NCBI RefSeq assembly: GCF_001194135.2
Contig: NC_068994.1
Location: forward strand, 36,517,093 to 36,581,092
Length of the DNA: 64,000 nt
Source of the DNA: Octopus bimaculoides
Lineage: Eukaryota
Direction of reading: 5' to 3'
Position numbers and translations under genes: made by a program. Shown piece after piece: positions 26,173 to 60,616 of the stretch. The notes under the pieces are model-generated. The model worked only from the letters and a program-made list of their open reading frames with translations. It did not search any database and was not told the origin of the DNA. Within the stretch, counting starts at the first letter, position 1. Each line of letters begins with the position of its first letter.

Positions 26173-26213
<41 letters not shown>

Positions 26214-27320: not shown

Positions 27321-27351
<31 letters not shown>

Positions 27352-32830: not shown

Positions 32831-32849
32831 TGTTAATATGATGATTGAA

Positions 32850-34659: not shown

Positions 34660-34748
34660 TGGGTAAATTTGTCAGCAAACAGTCATGAGACTCAAACCCA
34701 CATCCCTGAAGACTCCGGCTGAGTGTTTTACCATTAAGCTAAACTGCC
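34660..34748 (-). mobile_element. tRNA-derived SINE head
   Basis: Reverse complement GGCAGTTTAGCTTAATGGTAAAACAC...GGGTTTGAGTCTC has A-box- and B-box-like motifs but no intact cloverleaf. Confidence 0.6.
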
Positions 34749-34774
34749 TGCTGACAAGTTCATCTGCTAATCTA

Positions 34775-34974
34775 CAGGGTGTCCACAAGGTCTGGGTACA
34801 TGGAGTAAATAAAATCATAACATAAACAATTAAATATAAGAAATAATAATTTCTTAAAGTATGTGTTAATCCCCATGTGGGTACATGGGGTAAATAAAAT
34901 CATAATATAAACAATTAAATATAGGAAATAATAATTTCTTAAAGTATGTGTTAATCCCCATGAACCCAGTCTTT
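34775..34974 (+). mobile_element. Tc1/mariner-type MITE remnant with an 85-bp tandem duplication
   Basis: TA-CAGGGTGTCCACAAGGTCTGGGTACATGG left end. Units 34793-34877 and 34878-34962 are near-identical. Partial right TIR CCATGAACCCAGTCTTT. Confidence 0.65.
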
Positions 34975-35489
34975 CTGCTTCTTTCTTCTTTTTGTTTAAC
35001 ATCCATTTTTCATGCTGGCATGGGTTGGACTGTTTTATGGGTGTGGGCCAGCTAGGGAACTGTTCAGATTCCAGTTGTTTGTTGTGGCTTAGTTTCTCCA
35101 ACTGGATGCCCTTCCTAATGTTAGCGTACTTTACAGTGTACTGGGTGCTTTTTACATTCTACTGACATGGGTATGTTTATGTAGCACCTGCACGAGTGCA
35201 TTTTATATAGTACTGGAACCTGTAAAGGACAAGCCTGTATGTATGGATGACAGCGATTTTACTTAGGTTGATGCATCTTCTCAAGTACAACAAATCACTG
35301 CAACTCCCAAACCCAGGATATAGAATGATGAGAGAGAACAAATTAGGCTGTGTGGGTCAAAAAGAGCAAGTGTATGATGACATGTAGATGATTGACAGTA
35401 CAGGATAGGAAGGTGAAGTTACATATATACACACACACATGTCCGCCACTACAGTCCTCCATGGCACAGGTTTAATTTGTGTATACAAA

Positions 35490-35765
35490 TTTAATTTGCG
35501 GTCCATGGGAAGAGCCGTTTTAACGATGCATCCTGCCCAAATCTTCGAAACGCCGGTGTTAAAACGGGGGTAGCTGATGAAGGAAAATGTTCTCTATGTG
35601 GCTTGTGTGTTTTCTGTACTCTGGTTATTATTATTTTCTTGTCTACGTTTTGTTTACAATGTCCTGTACCCAGATATGCACCTATATATACAGGTAGACG
35701 TAGGTATGCACATACCTGTATGTATATATGCATATACTCCTTTATTATTTGTTTTATATATATAT
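35490..35765. repeat. Dispersed repeat; inverted homologue at about 29350-29510
   Basis: GTGGCTTGTGTGTTTTCTGTACTCTG...GTCCTGTACCCAGATATGCA matches the reverse complement of TGCATATCTGGATACAGGAC...CAGAGTACAGAAAACACACAGGCCAC. Confidence 0.8.
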
Positions 35766-36685
35766 ATATNNNNNNNNNNNNNNNNNNNNNNNNNNNNNNN
35801 NNNNNNNNNNNNNNNNNNNNNNNNNNNNNNNNNNNNNNNNNNNNNNNNNNNNNNNNNNNNNNNNNNNNNNNNNNNNNNNNNNNNNNNNNNNNNNNNNNNN
35901 NNNNNNNNNNNNNNNNNNNNNNNNNNNNNNNNNNNNNNNNNNNNNNNNNNNNNNNNNNNNNNNNNNNNNNNNNNNNNNNNNNNNNNNNNNNNNNNNNNNN
36001 NNNNNNNNNNNNNNNNNNNNNNNNNNNNNNNNNNNNNNNNNNNNNNNNNNNNNNNNNNNNNNNNNNNNNNNNNNNNNNNNNNNNNNNNNNNNNNNNNNNN
36101 NNNNNNNNNNNNNNNNNNNNNNNNNNNNNNNNNNNNNNNNNNNNNNNNNNNNNNNNNNNNNNNNNNNNNNNNNNNNNNNNNNNNNNNNNNNNNNNNNNNN
36201 NNNNNNNNNNNNNNNNNNNNNNNNNNNNNNNNNNNNNNNNNNNNNNNNNNNNNNNNNNNNNNNNNNNNNNNNNNNNNNNNNNNNNNNNNNNNNNNNNNNN
36301 NNNNNNNNNNNNNNNNNNNNNNNNNNNNNNNNNNNNNNNNNNNNNNNNNNNNNNNNNNNNNNNNNNNNNNNNNNNNNNNNNNNNNNNNNNNNNNNNNNNN
36401 NNNNNNNNNNNNNNNNNNNNNNNNNNNNNNNNNNNNNNNNNNNNNNNNNNNNNNNNNNNNNNNNNNNNNNNNNNNNNNNNNNNNNNNNNNNNNNNNNNNN
36501 NNNNNNNNNNNNNNNNNNNNNNNNNNNNNNNNNNNNNNNNNNNNNNNNNNNNNNNNNNNNNNNNNNNNNNNNNNNNNNNNNNNNNNNNNNNNNNNNNNNN
36601 NNNNNNNNNNNNNNNNNNNNNNNNNNNNNNNNNNNNNNNNNNNNNNNNNNNNNNNNNNNNNNNNNNNNNNNNNNNATATATATAT

Positions 36686-37112
36686 TTCCTTTTACTTGTT
36701 TCAGTTATTTGACTGCATACATGCTGGAGCACCGCCTTTTGTTGAACAAATTGACTCCAAGACTTATTCTTTGTAAGCCTAGTACTTATTCTATCAGTCT
36801 CTTTTTCTGACTTGAGTGGATTTGGTAGATAGAAACTGAAAGAAATCTGTCGTATGTATATATATATATATATATATGTATATATCTGTGTGTGTGTGTG
36901 TGTGTTTGTGTGTGTATTTGTCCCCACTACCACTTGACAACTAGTGTTAGTTTGTTTATGTACCTGCAACCTAGTGGTTTAGCAAAAGACCAATAGAATA
37001 AGTACTAGACTTAAAAAAAAACAACTCCTGGGGTCGATTTGTGCGACTAAAACCCTTCAAGGCAGTGCACCAGCATGGCCAATGTCAAATAACTGAAACA
37101 AGTAAAAGGTAA
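36686..37112. mobile_element. Inverted pair of same-family SINE copies
   Basis: 36686-36812 is the reverse complement of about 36982-37110 (GATAGAATAAGTACTAG...CCAGCATG...GTCAAATAACTGAAACAAGTAAAAGG). Confidence 0.85.
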
Positions 37113-37267
37113 AAGATAAAAGATGAGAAACTTTTAAGAAAACATTTTGACAGAGCAAAAATTATTGTGTTTATAATTCAGGATATGTTGCATATATTTT
37201 ACAATAGCTATATAAAGTAATACGGGTTTAAATATATGAATCCAGTATTTCATGTATTTCAAATTTT

Positions 37268-37450
37268 GGCACAAGGCCAGTAACTCTGAGGGAGGGGCAA
37301 GTCGATTACATCAACCCTAATGTTCAATTGATACTTATTTTATTAACCTCAAAAGATGAAATGCAAAGTCAACTCTTGCAGCACTTGAATTTAGAACATA
37401 AGGACAGACAAAATGCCACTTAGCATTTTGCCCTGTGCAATAACTGTTCT
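37268..37450 (+). mobile_element. SINE copy (third repeat type)
   Basis: GGCACAAGGCCAG...GATACTTATTTTATTAACCTCAAAAGATGAAATGCAAAGTCAAC. Related fragments at about 18115-18205 and 45110-45190. Confidence 0.6.
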
Positions 37451-39612
37451 ACCAGTTTTCCGCCTTATTTCTCTACTATGATATATTGAAAAAGATATAA
37501 GTTATTAGAGAACTAAAACAGCCTCTCATAATAGTAATATGTGTTCAGCCATTTCTAATTCTGTAAGAAATAACTGTTTAAATCAATAGATAGATAAACT
37601 AAATAATTATGATCAATAAAAACGTCTTTTTGTGATTGTAGTTTAAAATTCAATTACTAAAGTCATTATTGTCAAACATTGAGCATCAAAAGAGCATATA
37701 TGTATAAATATNNNNNNNNNNGCAGCATCCTATTAAATTATTGTTAAATTAATCTTTTCTCCAAAGTAATGGTAAGGTGATATTTAAGTATCATTATGGA
37801 GAACCTTTCAAATTAGATGCAAGCAGACAAATTTGCTCTACTTTATAGTATCTAATGTGGTTAGGTTTTTATTCCTATCAGTCATATATATATACATATA
37901 TATTCTTCCTTAGACATCAGTAAGATCAGAAATGCAGCAAAAATTTAAAATATTCTGGTCAAATTAAAGAGGATCATGGGAAAATGGCACATGATATGAA
38001 ATTAATAAAACTTGACTAAATGCAAAACTTCATCATAAAATACTATCTATAGCTTCTTAACAATATGCTGGGCTGGCTCTCCATCTAATATATCTATACA
38101 ATAAAAAGTAGAAATTACTAAAATTAGTCGTTACTCATTTTGCCCCACTCTTGACATTCTTATTTATCATTTTTTATTGAAAATTTAAAATTATCAAATT
38201 AGACATTTGCATGAAAAAAAAAATTATGTGGAATCCAACAGAGAAAAGAAATTTGATAGCTAAACATCAAAAATTGTCCAGATATTTTATTAGCAACCTC
38301 AATCACAAACAGGTCAAATTTGAGGAAAAATTTCTTGAAAAAGAAGTACCTGCCACCTGACTATGTTTCAAGCTCCCTCAACTCCAGCAACAGCCATGTT
38401 GACCAAATTTTACCCCCAAAGATGATGCAACAGTACAGAATAACGATGTAATGCTTACAGTGTAATGGTTTCAAACAGGTAGGAAGAAAATAGTAAGAGA
38501 TCAGAAATTACTTAATTCGCCCCCACATCTTCAATCCCATCACCCATTTGCTGTATTTCAAATTAAACTATGGATTCACAACTGTTACAGTTGAATTACA
38601 AGCAAGCTTACAGTGAAGAAAATCTTTGTATGTCACAGATAGAGTAAGAGTAGCCATGGAGGTTTCACTTGTCTCTTTAGAAATTGCTGATAGCTTCCTT
38701 AATAAAAAAAGAACCTAATAAGCATTAGAGGTTGGTGATCAGGCAGCATAGAATCTTGAATAAAACTAGGAGGCAGAATATATTTATATGTGAGTCTGTA
38801 CGAATATGCTTACATGCACATACTTGTACTAACATGCTATCCTGAAAGTAATGTTTTGGCTGTGACATGTCCTTTCACATGTAATGATTATTCATTTACG
38901 CTTATGTATTTGTTTTGCAAGATTCCTGATCTGAAATCATGTGTTGAAACAGATATTGATATATTTAGAGATGGTTGTTTTTTCCCCCCAAATAAACAGG
39001 CACTATATATTCATTCTTTACTTCAGATTCATTATTGTTTTTATTTTATGTCCTTTGTCTGGAAATATTTCATCACACATCCTGTAACCTCTTCAGTGAC
39101 TTTCCATCCCATGTTTCTCCATTTGTTCTGTTTAGTCCATCGTGTTTTTTTATGGTCTGTATTCTTGTGTGTGTGTGTGTGTGTGTGCGCGGGCATGTGA
39201 GAGTGTATGCTTGTCTAAATTTTTTCTGCGTGTGTGTACATGGGTTTGCGTAATATATTGTTTGTATCCATGCCCTTTATTTAGTTTTGCTTTTTACTTA
39301 TTTACTTATCCATATCTCTATTTTTCTCCAGTTTTGCGTTGGGTATGTGCATGTGTATCATTTGTATGTTTGTATATGTGTTGCATAGGATTAATGGAGT
39401 AAACAATGAAGCTCAACAAATGTAGGGGTAAATCACTGGTGTTGAGAATACATTCCCTGGAAACAATTCAGTTGTTAGTGTTTAGCCTTTGCATTAAACC
39501 TGATTGAGATGATCCTGCTCATCATTAATCCTGATTGACCATCCATCTATCAATATATTAAGGACTACTTTCTCTCATCTTATATTTTATTATAGATGCA
39601 TTTTGCTTTGTG

Positions 39613-39756
39613 CACTAGCGTAACTAGGTGTGCTGCCTGGGCGGCCCTTTCGTTTGCTGCCCCTGGACCCCACAAAAAACACATATTGCCTACAGCAATA
39701 ACCTACAACAGGATGAAAAGTGCCAGACCACCCCTACCCCACTAGTTACGCTAGTG
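39613..39756. mobile_element. 144-bp hAT-type MITE
   Basis: Perfect 15-bp TIRs CACTAGCGTAACTAG (39613-39627) and CTAGTTACGCTAGTG (39742-39756). 8-bp flanks GCTTTGTG / GCTTTGGG (7/8). Confidence 0.85.
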
Positions 39757-42700
39757 GCTTTGGGTTATTTGTTACTGGACAAACTACAAATCGGAGGTTA
39801 CCCCAGTAGATAGCATTCACACACACACACATATATAGTTTGTGTGTGTGTGTGTTACCTTTATGTCCATCATATTTTTGTAAGAGTAACTAGAATGGTT
39901 TTCTCCTTGGAAAAATGCACTCCTTTCCTACAACTTGGAAATACATGCATTCATGTTTTATATATTAATATGTATGTGTATGTGTAAGTATGTATGGACA
40001 GTGTCTCTCTCTCTTCCTCTCCCTCTCTCTCTTCCTCTCTCTCCCTCTCTCTCTTCTCCCCTCTCTCTCTTCTCNNNNNNNNNNNNNNNNNNNNNNNNNN
40101 NNNNNNNNNNNNNNNNNNNNNNNNNNNNNNNNNNNNNNNNNNNNNNNNNNNNNNNNNNNNNNNNNNNNNNNNNNNNNNNNNNNNNNNNNNNNNNNNNNNN
40201 NNNNNNNNNNNNNNNNNNNNNNNNNNNNNNNNNNNNNNNNNNNNNNNNNNNNNNNNNNNNNNNNNNNNNNNNNNNNNNNNNNNNNNNNNNNNNNNNNNNN
40301 NNNNNNNNNNNNNNNNNNNNNNNNNNNNNNNNNNNNNNNNNNNNNNNNNNNNNNNNNNNNNNNNNNNNNNNNNNNNNNNNNNNNNNNNNNNNNNNNNNNN
40401 NNNNNNNNNNNNNNNNNNNNNNNNNNNNNTTTCTATTTTACTATAAATATCATGTGTGTTTTAATCTAAAGGTTACACAAATTGGTACTTTTATTTATCT
40501 ATAATTTTCAGCATCATAACAAAGGGGTTTGAAACTGTAATTTCCCATTTAACAAATCCCCAGAATGCTGAAGATCTAAAAGTATATACGTACTTTTTTT
40601 TACAGCTGAAGTCAGCTTACCTATCATAAGATATAGCTTATAATGATCAACTTCTTAATGACGGCATTCTTGCACTATAAGCAGCATAACTAGTGTAGCA
40701 TTTACTTTTGAAGATAGATGTCAGGATTTATTCATATGCACATTTGAATGGAATTTGGAGTTGTTGAATATAGGAGGTTTTTATGGCTGAAATTTAACTA
40801 ATATTTTGTATGTTGTGAAGGCATGTAGACTGGTTCTTAGAGTGTTGCACTCATGATTGATAGATCATGGGTTTGATTTCCAGGCCAGGCAGCATGTGTT
40901 CTTGAGCAAAACACTTCATTTCATGTTGCTGTAGTGGGTAGGAGAGTAGCAGAATCATTTGCATGTTGGTAGAAATGTTTTATGGTATATCTTCTGGCTC
41001 TCTAAAATTCTGAGTTCAAATCCCACCTGCTTGGAGAAGACAATGGGAAACCATACAGTAATCATTTCAAGTTTAGTCATGGATAGCTGTAATTTCAGTA
41101 ATCTTAATGGTGGTAGGGGAGGGTATGGGTCATATAGAGAGTGCTGGAGAAGCTTCACATGCATAGGACTTGCATGTTGTATTTTATAGAGAAGCTAACT
41201 TAATGGAACTTGTTTAAAATTCTTGCGATATTGGTAGCATTTTAAAAGATGCTCATGTAAAAGTTTTAAGAAATTTCAAGCTGTACAGGTACCAACTTTA
41301 TGACTGCGTTCAGATTGTACCGTATTTTTTTGAACATGTGTTGGTATAAATATTGCTAATGAAATTAATATTCTTGTTGAAGCCACTCTCTAGTAAAACT
41401 TAATTGTTACAAAGATTACTCAATGAATATTTAGGGTATGAGATCTTTAATGGATAAAGGCTAATATTTTTAGTTAAATTCTTAGAGTGAATGATTTGAG
41501 TTTGTGAATAATTTGAGTTTGAACGATTTGAGTGAATGATTTGTGTTTGTGTTGAGCTGGTGAATGATTTGTGGTGATGTACTGTAATATTTCATTTGGT
41601 TTCCTTTAAGTGTTGTTTTGTAAATTTCTAAGTTTAAAGTAGTATGATGAAAGTGACTATATATATGTTTTAAGATTGGAGATTTTTCTCAAATCTCTTG
41701 GATTGGCAAGTTACTTAGGTTTAGTAAAATTATGATTATGGTACTAGACATCTAAATGAAAGTAAGATTAAATAAATTTAAGCAATCAAATTCAGAAACT
41801 CCTGTTGAACCTTTTGTCCTCACACTTAACACCATATGGTATTATCGAAAGATGGAAGGGATTTTCATACAGCATAATTTTTATGATTGATTCAATATTG
41901 GACATGTAATCTCTAGGAAAAATTAGTGCATCCTGGAAAAATTTTTAAGATAAAGGTGTACAAATCAAGATATAAAGTGACATGGCTTGCATAGTGCTAA
42001 CAATTAAAGTCTGACTTCTATACTTAAATTAGTGGCAAGACTTCTAAATTAGTAGAATCAGTTGCATTATTTTTGGCAAATATTTGCAGTGCTATAAAAT
42101 AAAAATCTTTGGTAAGTGGGACGATCCTTTTTTGCTCTTTTGTCAGAATATACAAAGATACATTTGGAGACATTTGAAGTTTTCAATTTTTACTTCAGAA
42201 AATTGTTGGCATTTATTATAAGACATACTGAAAAATTACAATTCTTACCAAAATAAAATTATCCATCTCCAATTGTTCAATAATTCATTTGTATGAGGGG
42301 AACTTTTTAAAATTTTGAAATAGGACTTATTTTTATTTAGTAGCTCAGTATCTCTGTCAAAGATGAAAAATTTCTATTGCATTACTCTCCATGAAATTTT
42401 CAATTCTGTAAATAAGATATTTAATAACTTTCTTATGGATCCTGATATTCTTTGCTAAAAAATTCTAACAAGGGCCTGTTCATCATGAAACTGTTTTGCT
42501 CTATTTACAGAAAAGTGCTCAAGTTTCACCTTTCACATTTTCAGACAATAGTGGAAGAGTATGTGCTCTTATATAAATTACTCTTGTAGTGAGGAGAAAA
42601 TCATCAATTTAATTATTATACCTAGTTATGAGAAGCTGAAGAGACTACTTCATAATTGAAATTGATTAAAATTATTTAAGAATAGAATGCATCTTTAGGC

Positions 42701-44298
42701 AATGTTTTGATATTATTAGACCTCATCAGCAAAGATTAGTTCAGCACAACTGTTTGATCTTAAGTGACTGGTGAGATATATAGGGTTTTAATTAATAAAT
42801 ACTCAGTTGTGTAATAACTTAAAAGAACAAGTGTAAAAAATATCCAGGAATGAAAAACTAGCAGTAAAGTGTCTGCTCGTAAACTTGATGTGATGGACCA
42901 AAAACATTGAAGTAACAGTGTACCAATAATGGGTGAAAAAATTATTTAATTGAATATATTTTGGTCAAGCGAAGCAATCAAATTGATTTAAAAATGTTAA
43001 TTCATTGTTTTCATACAAAACTTAACAATACTTTTTTTGTCATTGATACTTTTGTACAGAAATACTAGAAACTGTGATGGCGGTGAAAAGATTCTTCTCA
43101 TTGTCTAAATATATTTGGTATTTAAAAAAATAGAAATTTGGTAATAAATAGGAATTTATAAAAAGTGGTGGTTAAAATTTCACTATTAAATGGTTCATTT
43201 GCAGAGAGTTTTGTGTTATGACTGCCAGAAAGTTAACTCCTTCTGGATCAAAAAGGAAGATAAAAAACTTTTAAACATATTTATGAGATACTTTGATGCC
43301 AACATTGCCTGCAGACTTGAGAACCTATACATTTTAGATACTGTTATAAATGAATAAACTCCTCTAGTATAGGATTACATGAGGACAATGGTCTGTCAGT
43401 CTCCCTTAATATAAATAAATGGCCATAGCATGGACTATCAGTACAAAACGTTAAAATTATCAGTTTTTAGACATTACATTGCTCTTAAATGGAAAAAGGC
43501 AATACTCTTATACAAAAGGAAATTGAGTTATACAGAAAAATAAATGGAGCCAAATCACCAATTATCTTTCACAGTTATAAAACCCTTCAGAATATAAAAG
43601 AACACCCAAGATGTTCTGTGAAATACATATCTTCAATGAAACCACAGCTTATTACAATGATGCTTTAATAAGTAGTGACTACAAGAATATGTCGAACATG
43701 TCCCATATTACAGTGGAACTAGTGTCAGAAACATTTCTAGCACAAGTGTGGCATTCAATATTGCTGTGATTTTCAGTTACTAATACTGCACCTCAAATAT
43801 ACAGTCACAACTAAGAACTGCATTGATATAGAACTACATCCATTCCAATTGCAATTGTGGTAACACCACATCCCTCTCCACTTAACAGTGAATGTTTTAT
43901 AAAGGTTCCTGTGTAAAATCCAAAGATATGTGATGATGGCAGTAAAAGGAAGTGCATCATATTCATGGAAAATGCAGTCAATTCAGGCATACAGAGCACA
44001 CATTTTCTTCATATTTAATCCAGAGTGTAACAGCTCCAATTTTCCATTTCAATTTATTGGGAAACTGAAGAATAGTGAAACAAATAACATCCTTGTGAGA
44101 TGGTGCAGTGCTAAATCTGAAACATCATATTTCAATGTGAGATGCAATTTATATTTATAACATCTTGATTCAGCATTGCAGCATGTTAAATAAGAAGAAT
44201 GAAATTTTGTCTCTGTGAAGGCATATGAGCATATTCCATCTGAAAAACATTTCAAATGAAGACTCAGTAATAACCCAACTTCAATTTGCATAAAGTAG

Positions 44299-44432
44299 TC
44301 ATAGGAAATATAAGCCCCGGAAATAGTGGCTTGTTTGAGCCAGAAAAGAGCATGTGCACAAAACAGCAATCAAGTCAATACAGACTATCAACTTGCTATG
44401 GTTAACAGCTGAATTTCTGTCAGATGCTTCCC
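44299..44432 (-). CDS. Candidate terminal exon of a second protocadherin (gene B): G-EASDRNSAVNHSKLIVC...GLYFL*
   Basis: Acceptor TTTTTCCACTTATAAACTAACAG|GG at 44433/44432 is phase 1, matching the 44662 donor across a 229-nt AT-rich intron. Other in-phase acceptors at 44329 and 43908. Confidence 0.35.
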
Positions 44433-44661
44433 CTGTTAGTTTATAAGTGGAAAAACATGTTGGAAAATTCACTTTAAAAAATATGTAAATAAACTCTGCT
44501 AGTATAAGTGCAGAACTTATTAACTCATTCTAAGCTTGTTTAAAAAAGAAAGATTATGACATTGGTTGAAAATTGTATACCATAGACAGCATTTTTGCAA
44601 TGAAAATGAAATTAAAAATAGTACAAGATTGCAAACAATATAAAAATTTCAGTGCACTTGC

Positions 44662-44812
44662 CTGGTAATGTTTCATAGAGTACAGTATCTGATTCAATCC
44701 AACCATGCCCATTTTCAACATTGGAAGATATCGATATTTGTTCACTGAATTGGTCAGGAACCATAAACATATGTTCTTTTTCTTTACCAATACAAGATGT
44801 CATCATTGACTC
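44662..44812 (-). CDS. Cytoplasmic-tail exon of a second protocadherin (gene B): ESMMTSC...SNVENGHGWIESDTVLYETLP-G
   Basis: Acceptor TTTTTTTCTTATACATTTGAGCCTTCAG|GAG at 44813/44812 (phase 0). Length 151 nt = 50 codons + 1. Donor CCAG|GCAAGT. Aligns with gene A exon 5699-5543 (I.SN.EN...W.E.....YETLPG) with identical phases. Confidence 0.75.
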
Positions 44813-46224
44813 CTGAAGGCTCAAATGTATAAGAAAAAAAATTAAAAAATTAAAAGGAAATTATGCATTTTCATGTTATTGGTGTAATGGCACAAAACAT
44901 TCTAAAAGAGTATATTTATTATTATCAATATTTGAGATAAATAAACAATTTTGCATGAATTCAATAGATCAAATACAATTTTGTAAGTAATTATTTTGGT
45001 TATTTTTCCTGTTATAAGTTCTAGAAAAACAAGACTGTATGAAAGTAAGTAGCACAACATTCAGAACACATAAAATAGTGTGTAAATGTTGATAATTTAT
45101 CTCAATACAGCATTGGTGCTTAATTCATTTAGCTTAGAAGGGTAGAAGATCAAGTCAATCAAAGTAGGATTTCAACTCAGAGTTGTAACATACCAAACAT
45201 TTCATCTATTATTCAGTCCATTCTCAAAATTTACAACGATACCTTCTAACTTCATTATTATTGTCATATTTTTCTCTATTCCGCTGTTTGAATATAAAAT
45301 AACCATCCAGATGATGCTCATCATTCTCACATATTTGCTAGAATGGATTAGATGCATTATCCCGCTTGGCCATTTCATCGTTTCTTCCATATTCTAGCTG
45401 AACTTTTCTGAGTATCACTTCATCAACTCCTAATTACTATTATTTATTACTTATTGCTATATTTTAGTTTATTTTTTCATTCTGTTCTCATAAATAAGCA
45501 TGCACTAGCTTATTATCTTTAAATCCAAGCTGACTTCATATTCATCGCTCCTTCTCTGATTCATATATCACATTTATCACACAATCAATTCTTTCAAGCA
45601 GGGAGATCATTTTTGGATGATAGAGAAGATGTATTTGAATGAAATTATGCTGTATATTAGTGATACCTATTTTATCATAATCTTGTTGACAAAAAGGCAG
45701 ATTTGATACTATTAAGATTGAAATTGAGAAGCATGAGTCACCATAAAACACATGCATTCTGCATTCATAACCAACTACGCCAGCCTATATTTGACAAAAG
45801 ATAAATGTCAAGTTCCTTTGTTATTTCTACTAGTATTTTATTTGTATTGATTTTAAAGAATATTATACTTCTAAAAATGAATTAGTCTTTTTAGAAAGCA
45901 ATTTTTAATAACCATATGGAATGAATTCATAAAGTTTTATCAAAAGACTTTGAATCATTATTAACAAAGCATTGCTTACAAAACCTTGCATTCTTTTTAT
46001 AACATATCTCATACAGCTTCATTTCTCCTATTTTATCTTTTACTTTGTTTCAGTTATTAGACTGTGGCCATGCTGGGGCACCATCTTCAAGTGTTTAGTC
46101 AAACAAATAAACCTCAGTACTTTTTTTAAGTGTAGTATTTATGCTATTGGTCTCTTTTAACAAACTGTTGTTAAGTTATGGAGTTGTAAAAAAACCAACA
46201 CTGGTTGTAAAGCAGTGGTTGGAA

Positions 46225-46282
<58 letters not shown>

Positions 46283-47809
46283 CAGATATATATATAATAG
46301 GTGCCCATTCAGTTTCCGTCTACCAAATTCACTTACAATGCACTGATCAGCCTGGGGTTATAGAAGATACTTGAAAAGGTGCCAAGGATTGAGACTAGAC
46401 TTAAAACTATACAGTTACAAAGCAAGCTTCTTAGCCACATAGCCGTGACTGGACCTATAAATAACTTTTGCATGTTTATTGAAGTTGGTGTAAATATTGA
46501 GTAATTTTTTTATTAAATAGTAACCTGTAATATTTAAACAAGTGGTAATTTTTCATATATTCATTAAGACTATAATTCTAAAATAACTTCTCTTTGAAAT
46601 TTGCTGTATCTTAAGTCTTTATATTTCCTTTATAAATCTTTTCCCATTACTTAGTATTCTTCTTTTTTTTTTCTGCTCTTTCTTCTTCATAGCTTTGATA
46701 ATTGAAATTATTTCAAAATAGTAAGTTCCTTTTATGTATGTATCCCAGGCAGTAATGCAAAGTGCATTACTTCAAACCTCCTCATGGCTGTACCAACATT
46801 TTTATGTCCCATGGTTTTGCTCAGAATATTTTGTTTGTAAATGCTGTCTCTATGAAGAAAATCATATTTGCTTATGCTTTCTGGTATTTATATTTGACAT
46901 AGTTTACAATACTTGTAATATAGCGTCTGTGTCAAGCTTTACCTACTGAGCTAAATATTTAAAGTGTGTATATACAAACATATATATATGTGTGTGCACA
47001 TACACACATATGGACACACATGCATGTGCACACACTGGCACAAATCCACACATATACATTTAAAGGTATTCTCTTTTACACAAACTAAATATATTTTTGC
47101 AATGTGCATAATGTATTAAGTATAAAAATATAAAATCTTTAAAAAAAAATTGACTAATAAGTTGCACATAAATAATAAGGTTTTAAATTAGATAGACAAT
47201 AAAAATAATTACATTCTTAGCCTCAGTTATCTTGCACAGCATTCTTAATATGAAGGAAATAGGAGATAATAGAAAATAATGAATTTGGATATTGATCTTG
47301 CAGAGAAAGGTTAGTTTAATAAGAAAGAATAAATAAATAGAATGTAGAAAATGCAGAGATATATCCATTAATCCTCTTGCATCACCTATGATTAGATTTC
47401 ATTTACTTATTTTTGATTAGCTACCGAGTTTGGGGGAAGGAAAGCTAACACAGATTCTTAAGAATGTTGCACCAGTCCTTACATCTTTAATTATAGTATT
47501 TAAAGCACCTAGCATAATTTATTCTTAAATTATAATTTATACAATTATGGTAATACATGTATGTAGATGTTATCAGTATTGGCTTCTCCTAAGAATTGAC
47601 TCATCCCCTTTCAAGTTGTTGTTGTTGTTATACTCTTGCATTGCTGATTTGGATTAGAGAACATGTAATCAAATTTTCAGTCTATTCTAGTATTTAAAAG
47701 ATTAAATTTAGTTCTGTATTTCTTGGGAATTTCATTCTATGAAATTCCCAATTTTAAATATATCACAACTTGTTAATATGCACTTTAATGAATATATTAG
47801 TTGACCTGA

Positions 47810-47912
<103 letters not shown>

Positions 47913-47977
47913 GGGAGAGAAAGGGAAAGAGAGAAGAGGTAGAGTCTGTAATCTTTCTGTTTTTTAAACTTACTTAC

Positions 47978-47992
47978 CATAACCTCAGGCAT
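47978..47992 (-). CDS. Candidate 15-nt microexon (MPEVM, phase 0-0)
   Basis: TTTCTCACCTTGAATTTGTCAG|ATGCCTGAGGTTATG|GTAAGT. Frame-preserving and compatible with the phase-0 acceptor at 44812. Confidence 0.35.
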
Positions 47993-48861
47993 CTGACAAA
48001 TTCAAGGTGAGAAACTTAAAATTACTATTGAATGAAATGCTTTTCCATAATAATGTTTTATCCAACAGTTTTCATATGACTAATGATCTGCAGGGTACAT
48101 TTCCAAATGAGAAAGCACCTTCATAAGCCAATATACAATCTTTAATAAATTTTTTTAATTGTGAAATTGCATAGGGTTCAATATCTTTATACCAGCTTTA
48201 ATAATGAATATGGCCCTTTAGGGTTATTGACAATGATGTTGTCATCATAGTTGTTGATTGCAATAACAAGCTGAGAAACATCAGAACTGTTACACTGGCA
48301 TGCATGATGATTGTAATCTATAGTAAAAAGTAATCCAAAGAAGGCCCAAGGAGCCTTGCTCTGTGGAGTAAGTGATCTTAATAATTGTAGCATAATCTGC
48401 AGAAAAGCAGCTGCCCACCATTTAGTATCTTCTATTCAATTAGCTTTGATGGTCAAATTGATTTTATAAAGAGAAAACAAAACAGGAAAATGGTGTCACA
48501 TATTATGTCTCTTCTAGATGAGGAGTGTGCTTCTCAAGAAGATTTTATTATTTTTGTGCTTTATACTACAATTTTTGTAAACAATAGCTTCATTGGTTAA
48601 AGGTTCCCAAAAGTCAATCACTAGTTCACTGCATTTCTGAGGCAAGAGTGACAATGGACTCTCTGTAACTCAGGTAAAATAAATACCATGATATTTCTGT
48701 TTGAATGCATCAATTTATTAGTTTTTTTCACTGATGTGTACATTGACAAAAGGTATATACTTTATATATATATGCTCACTATTTTTTATGTTAAAAGTCT
48801 CTTGGCTGTCATTCCTTTTTATATATGCATCAATTAATATTGTGTGAAACTCTCACTAAAC

Positions 48862-49156
48862 CAGGGATCAGCAACTTATTTTTGTAATGACCCACTTTTG
48901 ATGTTTTTACATTTTCCCTTGACCCATTTGTATACTATATCACATCACACATTTAAAAATATCCAAACATATCACTTCATGTCCATCACTGGCAAGATTA
49001 TGTAAGCAAAAAAGAAATTTAAAAGTCTGTGGCACTAGACTTTAAACATCCATCATCTACTCAATGACCTACAAACACATTAAATATGAACACTTTTTGG
49101 AAAAGGTTTGAAGCCCACAGTAAACGATACAGTGGTTCACTTGTTGCTGATCTCTA
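48862..49156. mobile_element. hAT-like MITE remnant
   Basis: CAGGGATCAGCAAC (48862-48875) versus GTTGCTGATCTCTA (49143-49156), 12/14 inverted match. TSD is ambiguous (CACTAAAC / CTCTAAAC). Confidence 0.55.
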
Positions 49157-49271
49157 AACAAACCAGCAAGATTTCAAAACTTCCATACTTTCCTTCTCCT
49201 ATATAACATTTGTTCCATAACCTTTCCTTTTTCAAGCTGAAATTGCTTACAGTAATCTATAGGTGCAATAA

Positions 49272-49400
49272 TGACTGTGTGTTAAGAGATTTGCTTTCCA
49301 GCCACATGGATCTTGGTTTGATCCCACTGTGCTCCACCTTGAGCAAATAACTTCTGTCATAGTCTTGTCAGTGTAATTTAGTGGGTAGAAACTGTGGCAA
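49272..49400 (+). mobile_element. tRNA-head SINE copy
   Basis: GACTGTGTGTTAAGAG...GGTTTGATCCCACTGTG...CACCTTGAGCAA. Same family at 59276-59420 (+), 25362 (+) and 46290-46445 (-). Confidence 0.6.
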
Positions 49401-49749
49401 AAGGCAATTGCTTCAGGTGCAGCACAGTGTAATCAAATCAGAAACTGTACTGTTGTGAAATGAACTTTGTAACCACATAGCCATACCTTCACCTTAACTA
49501 TATACCATACCTCTATCTATAGATTAGTACTTAGCAACTTCAGACTGAAGAAGGAAAACATCAGAAAATATATGTTATGCATTAGAAGGAAAGGATGCAA
49601 GTTATGAGATCCCAGTGTTTAGATGAACCTTAAAAAAAGCACTAAAAATGCATTTTAAACAAGAATGAGGATATAGAAACCTTTAACATACAAGATAGCT
49701 GGACATTTTTAGGATGCAACCTGCTGAAAAACCATTGATTAGTCTTGTG

Positions 49750-50450
49750 CTTGGAGAAAGAAGCAAATCGTTACTTAGTAGCTCCATGATTAAGGCTCGA
49801 AATGTCATACAACAGTTCTTAAAAGTGAGAAAGAAAATTAGTAGTAAAGACTGATATCAGAATGCTGACTATCAGCTCCATTTGGGAAAAAGTGGTATGT
49901 GAATGTTCTAGCTATGATAGTGTAAGAGATGAAGTTTTACTAGTTTGCAAGACAGTGTGTTTGACTGATACAGGATTCTTTGAAAAGAAGTGCATCCAAA
50001 ATAACAATGACATTTTTAGGGACAGTGAAAGGAAATGGATGGGAGTATGATTTTAGGATAATGAAAGGGTACCTTAAATGGGACATGAAGAATGGCCAGT
50101 TACTTTATTAGGTTAATTTCAACTTGGTTACTCAGTTAACCAGAGTGATGATCCCTTAGTAGGTTCTCCTTGATTAATTGAGGCAGGGAATGTTGAAGGT
50201 GTGTCAGGAATAGTTGCTGAGATGTTCGAAAGCATCAAACTACATAAATAGTTACATGAGTAATAATAATAATAATGTTAAAATAACGAGATAATTAACT
50301 TAATGTATACAGAGCTCAGGTACACTACATTACATCAGAAAAAATAACCAAATCTGCATGAACAGATCATTGAACATTGAAGTCATGGGAGAATACACAT
50401 CACATTATGGGATTCCTCATTATGGGGAAACTTTTGGGAACACAACTTTT
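49750..50450 (+). mobile_element. Decayed RTE LINE RT remnant
   Basis: GGAATAGTTGCTGAGATG translates to GIVAEM, with weak downstream similarity to the NYRG.KL motif region; fragmentary. Confidence 0.4.
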
Positions 50451-50816
50451 GTGTAATGTGCGAAAGCTTGGGTGGAATTATGAAATAATTATTTTGCAAT
50501 ACACTTGTAATATGAAATAAAAGTAAAATATTGAGATATGTTTACTAACACTGTTTGGATTGATATTTAACTCTTTGAAACATAAATTTGTTCATTGAGT
50601 TCTCCTTATCCAACTTACAATATCATTTTCACCTCTCTTTTTTTTTTGTTTCATTGTCACTAAGAACTAATATAGTTGTGCCATCAGATTTTTCATTAAT
50701 ATCTGTTATAGTTCTCAAAATGCTTTCAATTTTCTGTTTACAATATTTATCCCATTTGGTAATCCTTTATTTGTTATATTCTTGGTAATTATTTCTATAT
50801 TTTGATTTATGGCCCG

Positions 50817-50863
<47 letters not shown>

Positions 50864-53800
50864 TACACACACTTTGCTCTTTTTTTCTCTTTTCTCACCT
50901 AATGATTGATTTAATGCAGTCTCCCATCAGGCTATTCATTTTTTTTCACATGAGCTCCTGGATCTTTAAAATTTTAATGGAGTTTCTCAAAAAGACTGAG
51001 CTATTCATTATGGCTAATAAAGCAAAACTTCAGAAGAGAGAATTTTCAGAAATTAGATCACATGCTACTTAATAAATTCTTCTTTGTGTTTATTGACTCA
51101 GAATGAAAGGGTGAGTGAGGTTAGTGTTGTTAATATTTCATATGAAATATTCATAATTAGTTTTGGAAGGTAATACATATGCAAATATGGAATTCCACAG
51201 CACTTCAGTGTATGTTAGTTATATGGTCATATCGTTACTGCCATCATCACCAAAGTTGTCATCATCATCATCATTATTATCATCATCCTTATTTAATATT
51301 ACTTTCCAAGTATGCCCGTTTTCCTATTACTTCAGATTTCTTGATGGAGAAGGAATTACCAGATACTTATATCAAGAAAGAGAGTCATCCCCTCCCCCCN
51401 NNNNNNNNNCCCCACGTGTGTATCTGTGTATGCTATATGAATTATGCTATCTGGAACAATTGTGCATATTTGATTGATGTATATATTAGGAAGGAATCTC
51501 AGAAAAGGTGACTTAGAAAGAAAGTATAAATAAGTAAATTTTTCATTAAGGCTAAGATAATGGTATCTTGTTTAGTACAGCAGAAAGTATTGTCAGATTT
51601 GCAGAGAAGTAAAGAGGAGTCATAGTTGCTGATGGACAAAAATACTGGAAGTTTATACTGGAAACAGTTTCATTTATAGAAAGAGTTATCTAGTTTATCT
51701 AGTCACTTATACAGTCAAAGAATAATAATGGTTGTAAAGTTATTTTTTTAAATTTTATTTTTAAGATTGTAAGTATAGAATATAAAATAAATGAAAACTA
51801 AAAAGATAAAAGACAATAACTTTAATTAACCGTGTGATGCACATGAATAAATATAACTGATGTTATGGCAACCTATAAAAACAAATGAGTTGTAAAAAGT
51901 GGGGAAAAAATAACTGATTTGTAAGCAAATTGTTTTATTGATTTCATAATCTGAATTTATCAACACTTTCCACAAAGGAGGAAGTAGCACAACATTGTGA
52001 CTGAAAATCTGAAATTAGATTAATACTGCCAAATTATATCGTTACGCATCTGAATTGATTACACAGCTATACATTTTAGATAAGATTTTTAATATAATAT
52101 TCAAATCTGGAGAATAATCTATGTATTATTAGCTTCATTGAGCCACTATGATGTCTAGAGTATAAAGAAAATAAGTTAGAACTTTGATTTCACTATCACT
52201 ATGCCTGTGATACTAAAATGTAGGAGTAGAATAATAAAATAGGAAGTGGAATAGAACCAGCGAGTGTGTTTATTGCTGGCATAATGATCCTCCTGTGATA
52301 CAGCAAAAAATGTCCGAATAATTAAGTTCACACCAAGAATCTTGCAAACCAAATAGTAAAGTGTAATATAAGACCACATCCAAAAAGAGAAAAAGGTGAA
52401 CCAACTGACTGACATAATGTAACTTGTCAACATGCACAAGTCTTTAAACCAGAGGGGTGAGGCTTCCTCTCTCTGTTATTTCCATTTTTACAGTAGTCTT
52501 GGGCCATCTCCATTTTCATCTCGCTCAGTTCCTCCTCCTTCTGTCACCTTAACTATGTCCCTTCTCCCTTACCATGACTTCCACTGACTCCTATGCCTTG
52601 GCTTTCATCACTACAATATTGGCACAATGGAATTTCCATTCACATTTTTTTTCTGATAACATGGAGCTATTCAATAGAAACAGTAATGCTAACAATCACG
52701 CTGGTTTCTGAATACTTTCAAAGCAATGGACACAGCCCATTTCTCCATACTGCCATCCACTTCCAAAAAAATTATGCTTGACATAAACACTAAAAATAAA
52801 GGTGTTTTATCTGCAATTGGAGATGGATAAATACAACAAACAAATCCAAACATAATATAAATCAGGATTCTTTTCTACCCTGAAGATATACATCTACTTT
52901 GGTGTTGATGACTGTTAATGTTTGGAAATGCTGTCTAGACTTGACTGTATTATATTACTGGTTCATTTACAATCCATTTGACAGTTTGATTGGCTTTTGT
53001 TCTTTCTCATAATTTTAAAATATTAAAGAAATGAAATCTGACAAACTAGTTGAAAAACTTTTTCAGTTGCTTGGGTTAGAAGTGAAAAGAAAGTTTAAAG
53101 AGAGCCTAGTAAATATCACTAGAAACTAATCCGAGTAGGTATAAGCACTTTATTAATAAGAAGACTATGTTCAGTAAATATGTATATGAAATAAATGTCA
53201 TTTAAAGAGGTGTATTGGTAGAGAAAGAATAAAAATGCATAGTGAATTAATGCAAGTGATGCTTTATTAAGTGCAGTGAATTGGCAGAGGCATTACAACA
53301 GTAGATATTTAGAACAGTATTTGTTCTAAATCTCTGCATACTGAATTCAAATCCTGCCCAAATCAATTTTGCTTTTTCCTTGCAATATTTATTCTGACTT
53401 TTTGTGTCCTCAGTTCGAATTCTTCAATGGTCAACTTGGTTAAGATACTTAATCCATTACCTGGTTTAGTACCAATATCACACACACACACATGTGCACA
53501 CACACATTAAAAAAAATGCTTGGAAAGATGACAAAGGAACTCAGAAAATTTACACAAGACATGGACCTACTCTTCCCTCATCAGTTCAGAACAATTTCAC
53601 ACCTGTAATGCTAATATTGTTAATTTTGATGGTGTCAACAACAAAAGGCTGCTTTGAATAAGTGAGCAAACATAAAGAATGGTGACAAAAATAAATGACA
53701 CAGGTTGTTGGTAGATATATAAATATACACATACGAATAAAGGCCTTATGGCTATGTGACAGCATAAAGATAAAACATATAAAAGGAAGGCTAATAGAAA

Positions 53801-54099
53801 ATGATATCCTATGGAACTCGAAAAGGTAAATAGAGAGGTATAAAAAAAGTGGGATAGAAGAAATAGAAAGATAGAATGGAAGCTGGGTAAACAAGAGGAG
53901 CCCAGGGCTGAAGGTAGATGCAAAGACAAAAGTATAAGACTAAACAGGTTAGTGGCCAAGCAGGAAAAGGAAGGTTGAAAGAAGAAATAGGATGCTCACA
54001 TGCAGGGAAGGAAAAGAGAGAAAACAAGTAGTGAAGGGCAGAAAGAAAGGCCAAGGAAGAGATAGAAAGCAAAGTAAAGATATATATATATATCTTCCT

Positions 54100-54806
54100 C
54101 ATCCCAGGAAGACCTGGGATGAGGTGGTGAGGCACGACCTTCAAACATTGGGCCTCACTGAGGTGATGACTTCTGACCGAGACCTTTGGAAATATGCTGT
54201 GCGTAAGAAGACCTGGCAAGCCAAGTGAGACCTAAATCCAAGGCCTCTGCCAGGAGTGTAGCCAGCCCACTTATGCATACCTTCCTTCATTGGATACTAA
54301 ACTCTGCTTGCGAAGACCTGTTGAGGCAAGTGAAATCGAACTAAATTCGATGGCTGGCATCCATGCCAACGTCGTCTCCTTCATTGGACATGAAACTCGG
54401 CTTGTGAAGACCTGTTGGGGTAAGCGAAATCGCGATGGCTCCTGTGCCTAGCGTCGCCTTCCTGGCACTTGTGCCAGTGGCACGTGTAAAGACATTCAAG
54501 CAAGATCATTGCCAGTGCCCCTGGACTGGTTCCTGTGCAGGTGGCACGTAAAATACACCACTTTGAGCGTGGCCGTTGCCAGTATTGCCTGACTGGCCCT
54601 TGTGCACACCTGACTGGCCCGGTGGCACGTAAAAGCACCCATTATACTCTCGGAGTGGTTGGCATTAGGAAGGTCATCCAGCTGTAGAAATTCTGCCAAA
54701 TCAGATTGGAGCCTGGTATAGCCATCTGGGTCACCAGTCCTCAGTCAAATCGTCCAACCCATGCTAACATGGAAAGCGGACGTTAAACGATGATGATGAT
54801 GATGAT
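54100..54806 (+). mobile_element. 5'-truncated RTE-clade LINE: end of ORF, 3'UTR and (GAT)6 tail
   Basis: PRKTWDEVVRHDLQTLGLTEVMTSDRDLWKYAVRKKT* (stop 54226-54228). GC-rich 3'UTR of about 560 nt with internal direct repeats. GATGATGAT tail at 54789-54806. Confidence 0.85.
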
Positions 54807-54877
54807 ATATATAGTAGAAATTTACAGAAAAACAAAAGGCCAAGACAGGTGTATGAACAACAGGCAGGTGTAAAGAG

Positions 54878-54925
<48 letters not shown>

Positions 54926-55759
54926 ATAGTGAACATTACTGCATATAAAGAAATTCTTAGATTTGTCTTTTGAGAAGTATTCTGTCAAATGAACAGAACT
55001 AGTATCATTTTTGAAAACTCACACACACACACACATGCATGCATATTATTTTGGTTGAGTTTAGTCTTTTGCTACCCAAAGTTTCACCCGTGGGTATACA
55101 GGATCTTTAAGCAAGTTATAACTTGCCTGAAACTCAAACTGACTAATCAAAATCGAATATATTATTATAGTATTGAGTATTCTTTTCTCAGATTGGTAAC
55201 ATACAAAAGAGTAATGCCATGAGGAACAACGACAATGGTTACAACAACAATAACAATGACAATGATACTATAGAGAAGAACAAACATACAAACATAGAAA
55301 GATACAAGCATGCCAAACTTAAGGACCAGATTAGCCGTAGTAGTAGCAGTAAAGATAAAGGAAACGTAGGGTCAGCAGAATGGGAGAAAATAGCCATAAA
55401 CTTAATGGTGGGGCAGTAATAACAGTAACAACAACAACTCTAAAAATAAGAATAATGGCAATAATGAGACTGCGTACAACTACAACAACAATAATGGAAA
55501 CAACTATGTAAACATGCAAACCAATGCAAATATTACTGACAACAACAATACACCACCACCACCACCACCACCACCACCACCACCAATAACAACAACAGAC
55601 ACAACCAAGGAGATGGTAACCAGAGAAATGATATGATAGTTAGTAGTACAATGGGTATAAATGACACCAACCCTTTCTATTCTTTATTCATCAACCAATG
55701 GGATAAATCATACGATATGAGCGGATATGAGCTGTATTTATCCGACAACCCTACCCTTC

Positions 55760-59422: not shown

Positions 59423-59468
<46 letters not shown>

Positions 59469-59770: not shown

Positions 59771-59801
<31 letters not shown>

Positions 59802-60536: not shown

Positions 60537-60616
<80 letters not shown>

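What the first reader, a model, noticed from the sequence alone, without database searches (positions are those of the whole stretch)
44662..44812. Orphan paralogous Pcdh tail exon: possible modular variable/constant splicing in an invertebrate cluster
Seen: a second YETLP exon with the same phase 0/1 boundaries, 35 kb upstream of gene A, with no cadherin-repeat exon between it and the window end (19 kb). All ectodomain-to-tail junctions here are phase 0, so an upstream ectodomain exon could splice to this tail, to gene A's tail (5699), or to the 63-kb candidates. Inference: either (a) a tandem gene with a long intron, (b) an ectodomain exon lost in the 51400 gap, or (c) combinatorial ectodomain x tail splicing, convergent with or the reverse of vertebrate variable/constant exons.
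Basis: partly seen in the sequence, partly recalled or inferred. Interest (0 to 1): 0.85.

Follow-up and report, generated by a model that had tools for sequence, protein, structure and literature searches.

The report
Second exon of neighbouring octopus protocadherin
The "orphan" exon is the ordinary, well-conserved cytoplasmic-tail exon of a second, already annotated octopus protocadherin gene whose large first coding exon lies just outside the window behind a roughly 40-kb intron, so it gives no sign of vertebrate-style mix-and-match splicing.

Summary
Window 44812..44662 (minus strand) is a 151-nt exon, phase 0 in and phase 1 out, ending in YETLP. It is a 31-36% identical paralogue of gene A's tail exon (5699..5543).

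The exon is not an orphan. It matches residues 122-171 of Octopus bimaculoides XP_014773890.1 (LOC106871765) exactly. That model joins it to one upstream transmembrane/juxtamembrane exon that is absent from the window.

In O. sinensis the orthologous gene (XP_029645609.2, protocadherin-18-like) has a 2.4-kb cadherin exon 45,130 nt upstream of the same tail exon. The window is collinear with that locus, which places the missing exon about 18 kb beyond position 64000. The 51400 gap hides about 64 nt at most.

The exon shows 1/151 differences against each of two other octopus species, while its flanks differ by 5-14%. It is therefore under selection.

Family-profile and cadherin scans find only two tails and one ectodomain exon in the window, and nothing at 63 kb. 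Three loci from three species show one private tail per ectodomain exon.

Reading (a), a tandem gene with a long intron, holds. Reading (b) is refuted. Reading (c) has no support and contradicts published conclusions.

One loose end remains. The exon that closes this gene's reading frame (14294..14046) has its own donor site and sits 4.7 kb upstream of gene A's coding exon.

The parts
44662..44812 (-). Cytoplasmic-tail exon (YETLP exon) of the second protocadherin gene, 'gene B' (O. bimaculoides LOC106871765). 151 nt, phase 0 in, phase 1 out, GC donor (CCAG|GCAAGT).
   Evidence: The translation equals residues 122-171 of XP_014773890.1. It differs at 1/151 nt from O. sinensis and at 1/151 nt from a third octopus, against 5-14% in the flanks. 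It scores 92 bits against the family tail profile.
44813..44819 (-). Seven-base extension used by an alternative upstream acceptor (tttgAG|CCTTCAG|GAG). It shifts the frame to PSGVNDDILYW and a stop (TAA 44786..44784).
   Evidence: This reading matches the C-terminus of O. bimaculoides isoform X2 (XP_052829094.1) and of O. sinensis XP_029645609.2. Both AG dinucleotides are conserved in three species.
44820..64000 (-). The part of gene B's long intron (ectodomain exon to tail exon) that lies inside the window. It holds no coding exon and only a 10-N gap at 51400-51409.
   Evidence: It is collinear with O. sinensis L003 30041..57478 at 91% identity. It has no cadherin or tail hits. The O. sinensis intron is 45,130 nt.
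14295..44661 (-). Intron between the tail exon and the exon that closes gene B's reading frame (about 30.4 kb, including seven N gaps).
   Evidence: Inferred from the only match in the window to the C-terminal residues AGI-stop of XP_014773890.1.
14046..14294 (-). 249-nt exon that ends gene B's reading frame (G|CT GGA ATC TGA = A-G-I-stop). It is otherwise non-coding. It has an acceptor (tttacag|) and a strong donor (TATTG|GTAAGT), and lies 4.7 kb upstream of gene A's ATG.
   Evidence: A paralogue sits in the same position upstream of gene B's ATG in O. sinensis (L003 4823-5073), 72% identical inside the exon, with both splice motifs conserved and the flanks unalignable. Homologous blocks ending in TTG|GTAAGT lie upstream of each gene in O. 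vulgaris.
6946..9372 (-). Gene A large exon: acceptor tttcag|ATT at 9372, ATG at 9333, signal peptide, cadherin repeats, transmembrane segment, juxtamembrane region, donor CAG|gtttgt (phase 0).
   Evidence: Pfam Cadherin hit at E=7e-67 with five stretches, plus Cadherin_2.
5543..5699 (-). Gene A tail exon (INFLSS...HYETLP, G|gtataa), 157 nt, phases 0/1. It is the paralogue of the 44.7-kb exon.

Best explanation
The 44.7-kb exon is the private cytoplasmic-tail exon of a second, complete protocadherin gene (gene B). Gene B lies head-to-tail upstream of gene A on the minus strand. It corresponds to LOC106871765 in O. bimaculoides and to the orthologue of O. sinensis 'protocadherin-18-like' XP_029645609.2.

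Gene B's large exon encodes the signal peptide, cadherin repeats, transmembrane segment and juxtamembrane region. That exon lies outside the window, roughly 18 kb beyond position 64000, so the intervening intron is about 37-45 kb.

The tail exon is spliced in phase 0 to that exon. Through a GC donor in phase 1, it is then spliced to a 249-nt exon at 14294..14046, which adds Ala-Gly-Ile and a stop.

The exon supplies a motif shared by the family (...SGHGW...YE[T/E]LP). Its function is unknown; I presume it is a docking or sorting signal in the cytoplasmic domain.

Genes A and B are products of whole-gene tandem duplication, and each kept its own tail. The shared intron position and phase are inherited. 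They are not evidence of exchange between the genes.

Shown here: exon identity, the junctions in the gene models, synteny, conservation and exon counts. Inferred: the position of the first coding exon in this genome, expression, and the role of the motif.
For: (1) XP_014773890.1 (174 aa) consists of a 121-aa TM/juxtamembrane segment, then this exact exon, then AGI.

(2) The same 90%-identity cluster holds O. sinensis XP_029645609.2, a 758-aa protein with cadherin domains.

(3) In its locus L003 the cadherin exon is 9903/9971..12348 and the tail exon is 57479..57629, giving an intron of 45,130 nt.

(4) The window's minus strand is collinear with L003: 64000 corresponds to 30041 and 32831 to 66684, at 91.3% identity.

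(5) The exon is constrained. It differs at 1/151 nt from each of two species, against 13.9% and 4.7-8.7% in the flanks (binomial P=4e-9 and 6e-3 to 2e-5).

(6) Exon counts are one to one. There are two tails and one ectodomain exon in the window, one of each in L003, and three tails for three genes in O. vulgaris L004.

(7) The parts have diverged together: ectodomain 61%, TM 72%, juxtamembrane 34%, tail 31% identity between A and B.

(8) The literature describes full-gene duplications with no shared final exons (PMC9068888).
Against: No transcript data could be examined, so the junctions rest on NCBI gene models, whose RNA support I could not inspect.

The first coding exon of gene B was not seen in this genome.

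Both O. bimaculoides models start at a Met just before the TM segment and lack the ectodomain. The cause could be an assembly gap or a real truncation.

The O. sinensis exon carries a 1-nt frameshift in an A5 run. This is probably an assembly error, but that is not proven.

The O. sinensis model and O. bimaculoides X2 use the acceptor 7 nt upstream, which removes the YETLP tail from the product.
Confidence: 0.85

Rival explanations
1. Combinatorial splicing. Several ectodomain exons of the cluster can each splice to this tail, to gene A's tail or to other tails, giving variable x constant diversity as in vertebrate clustered protocadherins.
For: All the junctions have compatible phases. The genes lie head to tail on one strand. 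The tail exon's downstream partner lies next to gene A, so some transcription across the gene boundary is conceivable.
Against: Every ectodomain exon seen has its own tail directly downstream, in three loci from three species. The tails are only 31% identical and have diverged in step with their own genes. No tail is shared or present in a single copy. The annotated models are one to one. PMC9068888 states the opposite. Phase compatibility is expected among duplicates.
Confidence: 0.04
2. In this species gene B is a truncated gene. Its ectodomain has been lost or disabled, and the product is a 174-aa membrane-anchored tail (TM + juxtamembrane + YETLP exon).
For: Both NCBI annotation releases for O. 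bimaculoides give LOC106871765 products that start at MFTSVDKK..., just before the TM segment, and call them 'uncharacterized protein'.
Against: The orthologue in O. sinensis has the complete cadherin exon, open throughout once one A is restored in an A5 run. The window's assembly has eight N gaps in 64 kb, so an interrupted 2.4-kb exon is an easy artefact. Strong conservation of the tail is expected for a working full-length gene.
Confidence: 0.12
3. The exon is a dead relic of a decayed duplicate and is not expressed.
For: It is isolated in the window. The O. sinensis orthologue has a frameshift, and the gene models are truncated or frame-shifted.
Against: It differs at 1/151 nt from each of two species where 7-21 differences are expected from the flanks. 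Both acceptors and the donor are intact in three species. It is included in NCBI gene models of two species.
Confidence: 0.02

Closest known systems
Octopus bimaculoides LOC106871765 (XP_014773890.1; isoform X2 XP_052829094.1)
   Same: The exon translates to residues 122-171 of XP_014773890.1 without a difference. The window also reproduces that model's last three residues and stop from 14294, and the frame-shifted end of X2 from the acceptor 7 nt upstream.
   Different: Nothing differs in the exon. The NCBI models lack the ectodomain, and their first exon lies outside the window.
Octopus sinensis XP_029645609.2, protocadherin-18-like (CM016872.1:3.95-4.01 Mb)
   Same: It is the orthologous gene in a collinear locus. 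The tail exon is 150/151 identical, and the acceptors and GC donor are the same.
   Different: The model uses only the upstream acceptor and so ends in PSGVNDDILYW. The exon carries one Ser-to-Ala change. The assembly has a 1-nt frameshift in the cadherin exon.
Tandem multi-exon protocadherin genes of coleoid cephalopods (Albertin et al. 2015; Albertin et al. 2022, PMC9068888; Styfhals et al. 2019, PMC6339937)
   Same: The genes are arranged head to tail on the same strand. Each has a large cadherin/TM exon followed by small private cytoplasmic exons. Diversity comes from whole-gene duplication.
   Different: Genes A and B lack the longer C-terminal exon (...PMKNSF...KPLP.IP) seen in other family members. 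The intron is unusually long (45 kb, against 1.2-1.5 kb in gene A and in the O. vulgaris genes).
Vertebrate clustered protocadherin alpha/gamma variable and constant exons
   Same: Both have large single exons that encode the ectodomain, TM and proximal cytoplasmic part, arranged in tandem and joined to downstream cytoplasmic exons.
   Different: Here each large exon has its own tail. The tails are as divergent as the genes. The large exon appears to be preceded by an intron rather than being a first exon. No shared constant exons were found.

Membership tests
Cephalopod tandem protocadherin gene unit (whole-gene duplicates) | A large exon encoding cadherin repeats plus a transmembrane segment | tested here: met
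   Gene A hits Pfam Cadherin at E=7e-67. For gene B this is seen only in the O. sinensis orthologue (L003 9971-12348, 61% identical to gene A), because the exon lies outside the window.
Cephalopod tandem protocadherin gene unit (whole-gene duplicates) | A private downstream cytoplasmic exon with the family motif (...GHGW...YE[T/E]LP, phase-1 donor) | tested here: met
   The profile of 12 tails scores 92 bits for 44.7 kb and 77 bits for 5.6 kb (both exons were in the training set). Independent family members align to it at E=1e-5 to 1e-15.
Cephalopod tandem protocadherin gene unit (whole-gene duplicates) | One tail exon per ectodomain exon, same strand, head to tail | tested here: met
   Window, L003 and L004.
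Cephalopod tandem protocadherin gene unit (whole-gene duplicates) | Transcripts join each tail to its own ectodomain exon only | not testable with these tools
   Only NCBI gene models were available. No spliced transcript contigs were found in the protein collection.
Vertebrate-type variable/constant clustered protocadherin locus | Many variable exons share one set of constant cytoplasmic exons | tested here: not met
   There are two tails for two genes at 31% identity, and three tails for three genes in O. vulgaris. No additional or shared tail was found.
Vertebrate-type variable/constant clustered protocadherin locus | Each variable exon is a first exon with its own promoter directly upstream | tested here: inconclusive
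   All four ectodomain exons seen have a pyrimidine tract and CAG|A 17-68 nt before the ATG. Each also has a conserved donor-bearing non-coding exon 2.9-4.9 kb upstream. This rests on sequence motifs only.
GC-AG introns | A GC dinucleotide at the 5' splice site within an otherwise consensus site, used in a spliced product | tested here: met
   The site CCAG|GCAAGT is identical in three species. XP_014773890.1 requires the junction after CCAG. Paralogues have GT at this site.

The most novel reading that the evidence does not exclude
Neighbouring protocadherin genes of this subfamily may be linked by splicing.

The tail exon of gene B does not end in a terminal exon of its own. It is joined to a conserved, largely non-coding 249-nt exon (14294..14046). 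That exon keeps a strong donor and lies 4.7 kb upstream of an acceptor 39 nt before gene A's ATG.

The same arrangement is found upstream of gene B in O. sinensis. Homologous donor-bearing blocks lie upstream of each gene in O. vulgaris.

This exon could therefore be the 5' leader exon of the downstream gene, borrowed as the 3' end of the upstream gene. That would give conjoined or read-through transcripts along the array.

The O. vulgaris annotation also has a 1,897-aa model that fuses two units.

If this is regular and regulated, transcription of one gene would be coupled to its neighbour. That would be a different kind of cluster logic from the vertebrate one.
Probability: 0.2. Interest if true: 0.6.

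Novelty: already known. Interest (0 to 1): 0.15.

Why it matters
Vertebrate-like variable/constant splicing in an invertebrate protocadherin cluster would have been a striking case of convergence. It would also contradict the published view of cephalopod protocadherin diversity.

The evidence shows the ordinary arrangement instead: a tandem duplicate with its own tail, separated from its main exon by a very long intron that runs off the window. The finding serves mainly as a caution that window edges and long cephalopod introns create apparent orphan exons.

Two things remain worth a look with existing long-read cDNA. One is the small exon shared, in position, between the end of one gene and the start of the next. 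The other is the 7-nt alternative acceptor that removes the conserved tail.

Tried and rejected
- A search with the 51-aa exon alone found only unspliced genomic ORFs from sequencing-run assemblies. These were useful only for measuring conservation.
- A search with XP_014773890.1 found no spliced transcript ORFs.
- Look-ups of the O. bimaculoides locus failed. I therefore could not inspect the first coding exon in this species.
- P0007 and P0011 are also not on record.
- I looked for a long C-terminal exon of the family (PMKNSF...KPLP) in the window and found none.
- I looked for a paralogue of the 14.3-kb exon downstream of gene A's tail and found none within 1-5543.
- Rfam gave no family above threshold in the window.
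- A hairpin scan of the conserved intronic islands gave energies within the background range.
- A Pfam scan of six other open frames in the introns gave only weak helix-turn-helix hits below the curated cut-offs. I make no transposon claim from them.
- My first two attempts at a conservation map used a linear coordinate filter that dropped most alignment blocks. I replaced them with a chained map.

Full report
**1. What is at 44662-44812.**

The feature lies on the minus strand. Reading 44812 down to 44662 gives an open 50-codon frame, ESMMTSCIGKEKEHMFMVPDQFSEQISISSNVENGHGWIESDTVLYETLP, plus one extra base.

- It is preceded by a long pyrimidine tract and ...ccttcAG|.
- It is followed by |GCAAGT. 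This is a GC donor in an otherwise consensus site, not the usual GT.
- The exon is 151 nt, phase 0 at its start and phase 1 at its end.

The window is AT-rich (about 31% G+C) and carries eight N gaps, so it is clearly animal genomic DNA.

**2. The paralogue and gene A.**

The one large open frame in the window is 9357..6868 on the minus strand.

- It has an ATG at 9333, a signal peptide, cadherin repeats (Pfam Cadherin E=7e-67, five stretches), a transmembrane segment and a juxtamembrane region.
- It ends at ...TQSHQ|gtttgt (6946, phase 0).
- Its tail exon is 5699..5543 (157 nt, INFLSS...HYETLP, G|gtataa).
- The two tails are 35% identical over 40 aa by tblastn (E=4e-4 within the window) and 31% identical in a global alignment.

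The exception is the "63-kb candidates". A profile HMM built from twelve family tails finds only the two known tails in all six frames of the window; the next best hit has E=0.54. Cadherin queries hit nothing outside gene A's exon.

**3. The exon belongs to an annotated gene.**

I searched with gene A's transmembrane-to-tail segment. It returned XP_014773890.1, "uncharacterized protein LOC106871765" of Octopus bimaculoides, 174 aa.

- Residues 1-121 are a transmembrane and juxtamembrane segment ending ...QRSHQ.
- Residues 122-171 are exactly the 44.7-kb exon.
- The last three residues are AGI.

Isoform X2 (XP_052829094.1) has the same first part and then PSGVNDDILYW. This is the window's sequence read from an acceptor 7 nt further upstream (tttgAG|CCTTCAG|GAG), which shifts the frame.

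The 121-aa segment is not in the window. Its only match there is the paralogous part of gene A, at 40% identity.

The last three residues and the stop have one match in the whole window to AG|C.GG.AT.stop: ttctttacag|CTGGAATCTGA at 14294 on the minus strand. My own estimate is that roughly 0.1 such matches are expected by chance.

The window reproduces the O. bimaculoides model exactly, whereas O. sinensis differs by one residue. The window is therefore most likely O. bimaculoides.

**4. Where the missing exon is.**

The 90%-identity cluster of isoform X2 also contains O. sinensis XP_029645609.2, "protocadherin-18-like", 758 aa. I fetched its locus as L003 (CM016872.1:3,946,176-4,013,682, reversed).

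- In L003 the cadherin/TM exon runs from an ATG at 9971 to 12348 (CAG|gtaggt, phase 0).
- The tail exon is 57479..57629, so the intron is 45,130 nt.
- The window's minus strand is collinear with L003's plus strand in 22 chained blocks. Window 64000 corresponds to L003 30041, and 32831 to 66684, at 91.3% mean identity over 24.6 kb.
- The cadherin exon of gene B is therefore expected about 18 kb beyond the window end.
- The 10-N gap at 51400 lies inside one continuous block (window 50508-53479 against L003 47097-50132, a difference of 64 nt). It cannot hide a 2.4-kb exon.

The O. sinensis exon is open throughout once one A is restored in an A5 run near L003 10,912. This looks like a homopolymer error, and NCBI bridged it with a small artificial intron.

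**5. The exon is under selection.**

I aligned three sequences: the window, O. sinensis, and a third octopus represented by 1.3-kb contigs from runs SRR11869394 and SRR11869384.

| Comparison | Exon differences | Flank divergence | Binomial P |
|---|---|---|---|
| Window vs third species | 1/151, synonymous GGG/GGC | 13.9% over 548 nt | 4e-9 |
| Window vs O. sinensis | 1/151, Ser to Ala | 4.7% locally, 8.7% regionally | 6e-3 (local) to 2e-5 (regional) |

Both acceptor AGs and the GC donor are identical in all three species. The exon is not a relic.

**6. One tail per gene.**

Between genes A and B (the latter taken from O. sinensis), identities are as follows:

| Region | Identity |
|---|---|
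| Ectodomain | 61% |
| Transmembrane segment | 72% |
| Juxtamembrane part of the large exon | 34% |
| Tail exon | 31% |

The tail has thus diverged exactly as far as the cytoplasmic sequence that is physically part of its own gene's large exon. This is the expectation for private tails, not for shared ones.

A full HMMER scan of 1.84 billion representatives with XP_014773890.1 found thirteen relatives at E <= 0.001. They include full-length cephalopod-type protocadherins in which ...SGHGW...YE(E/T)LP is followed by a further C-terminal region.

One of these, P0018, gave an O. vulgaris locus (L004; the assembly is identified in PMC10700109). It holds three head-to-tail genes in 26.6 kb and exactly three tail exons, each directly after its own cadherin exon.

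Albertin et al. 2022 state that cephalopods do not splice multiple first exons to shared final exons, and that the diversity arose by full gene duplication (PMC9068888).

Phase compatibility between the junctions is a consequence of common descent. The intron falls after a conserved SHQ codon triplet in both genes.

**7. Verdict on the three readings.**

- (a) A tandem gene with a long intron: supported.
- (b) An exon lost in the gap: refuted.
- (c) Combinatorial splicing: no support.

I could not examine transcripts. No spliced transcript ORFs turned up in the protein collection.

**8. A loose end worth recording.**

The exon that closes gene B's reading frame (14294..14046, 249 nt) is not a typical terminal exon.

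- After AGI-stop it is non-coding, and it ends in a strong donor, TATTG|GTAAGT.
- It lies 30.4 kb from the tail exon but only 4.7 kb upstream of gene A's ATG.
- Gene A's large exon has a good acceptor (tttcttttttggtttcag|ATT) 39 nt before that ATG.

In O. sinensis a paralogous 251-nt exon (L003 4823-5073) lies 4.9 kb upstream of gene B's ATG, and that gene also has an acceptor, 68 nt before the ATG.

- The two exons are 72% identical inside, with TTTACAG| and |GTRAGT at the same alignment columns. The flanks do not align.
- In phase 1 they read AGI* and VKPESKFSASPSREP*. The window copy would reach the same ...EP* stop if its earlier TGA were absent.
- No other paralogous block exists in the 4.7-4.9-kb intervals.

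In O. vulgaris, homologous blocks ending in TGTTG|GTAAGTAC lie 3.1 and 2.9 kb upstream of the next two ATGs. A third follows the last gene. These copies lack the acceptor.

The O. vulgaris annotation runs one gene through this block. It also contains a 1,897-aa model that spans two units.

This exon may therefore be the leader exon of the downstream gene, used as the 3' end of the upstream gene. Alternatively, undetected exons may separate the two genes. I rate regular, functional conjoined splicing at about 0.2. Only cDNA can settle it.

**9. Overall.**

The finding is a correct observation of an already annotated exon in a known kind of gene arrangement. Its apparent isolation comes from a very long intron and the edge of the window.

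Noticed in passing
window 14046-14294 (-); L003 4823-5073; L004 blocks ending at 6884, 16316, 25132: A conserved, largely non-coding exon with its own donor lies 2.9-4.9 kb upstream of every ectodomain exon examined. In the window and in O. sinensis it also has an acceptor, and in the window it supplies the stop codon of the upstream gene. It may be a leader exon shared between neighbouring genes.
   Followed up: partly
window 44813-44819 (-), stop at 44786-44784: An alternative acceptor 7 nt upstream shifts the frame and replaces the conserved tail by PSGVNDDILYW-stop. It is isoform X2 in O. bimaculoides and the only annotated form in O. sinensis. The stop lies 122 nt before the next junction, so the product may be a decay target or a tail-less receptor.
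   Followed up: partly
window 44656-44661 (-): The 5' splice site after the tail exon is GC (CCAG|GCAAGT) and is identical in three octopus species. Paralogous tail exons have GT.
   Followed up: yes
window 50951-51229, 51763-52109 and 48888-49046: Three islands inside the long intron are nearly identical to O. sinensis (2/279, 2/347 and 1/159 mismatches, against 8.7% background). They are closed in all six frames, have no Rfam match and no unusual hairpin. They are possibly regulatory elements or non-coding exons. The first has acceptor- and donor-like motifs on the plus strand.
   Followed up: partly
L003 about 10,905-10,915: The O. sinensis orthologous cadherin exon has a 1-nt frameshift in an A5 run. 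NCBI's model skips about 35 residues around it. It is likely an assembly error, but it could be a real lesion.
   Followed up: partly
window 25356-25642, 36813-37130, 46027-46458: A 300-430-bp interspersed repeat matches at least six places in the O. sinensis locus at 66-77% identity. It accounts for part of the bulk of the long introns.
   Followed up: no
L004 19247-26620: The O. vulgaris annotation has a 1,897-aa product starting here, about twice the size of one protocadherin. Two adjacent units are fused in one model, through either read-through transcripts or an annotation artefact.
   Followed up: no
window 5700-6945 versus 44820 to beyond 64000: The homologous intron is 1.2 kb in gene A and about 45 kb in gene B's orthologue, a nearly 40-fold difference between tandem paralogues.
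   Followed up: yes
window 21553-21960 (+), 24962-25240 (+), 32443-32832 (-), 55838-56466 (+): These open frames look by eye like transposase or reverse-transcriptase remnants. Pfam gave only weak helix-turn-helix hits below the cut-offs for the first and nothing for the others.
   Followed up: partly
window 1-5542: No exon that could follow gene A's phase-1 tail donor was found: no family C-terminal exon and no paralogue of the 14.3-kb exon. Gene A's last exon probably lies beyond the window start.
   Followed up: partly
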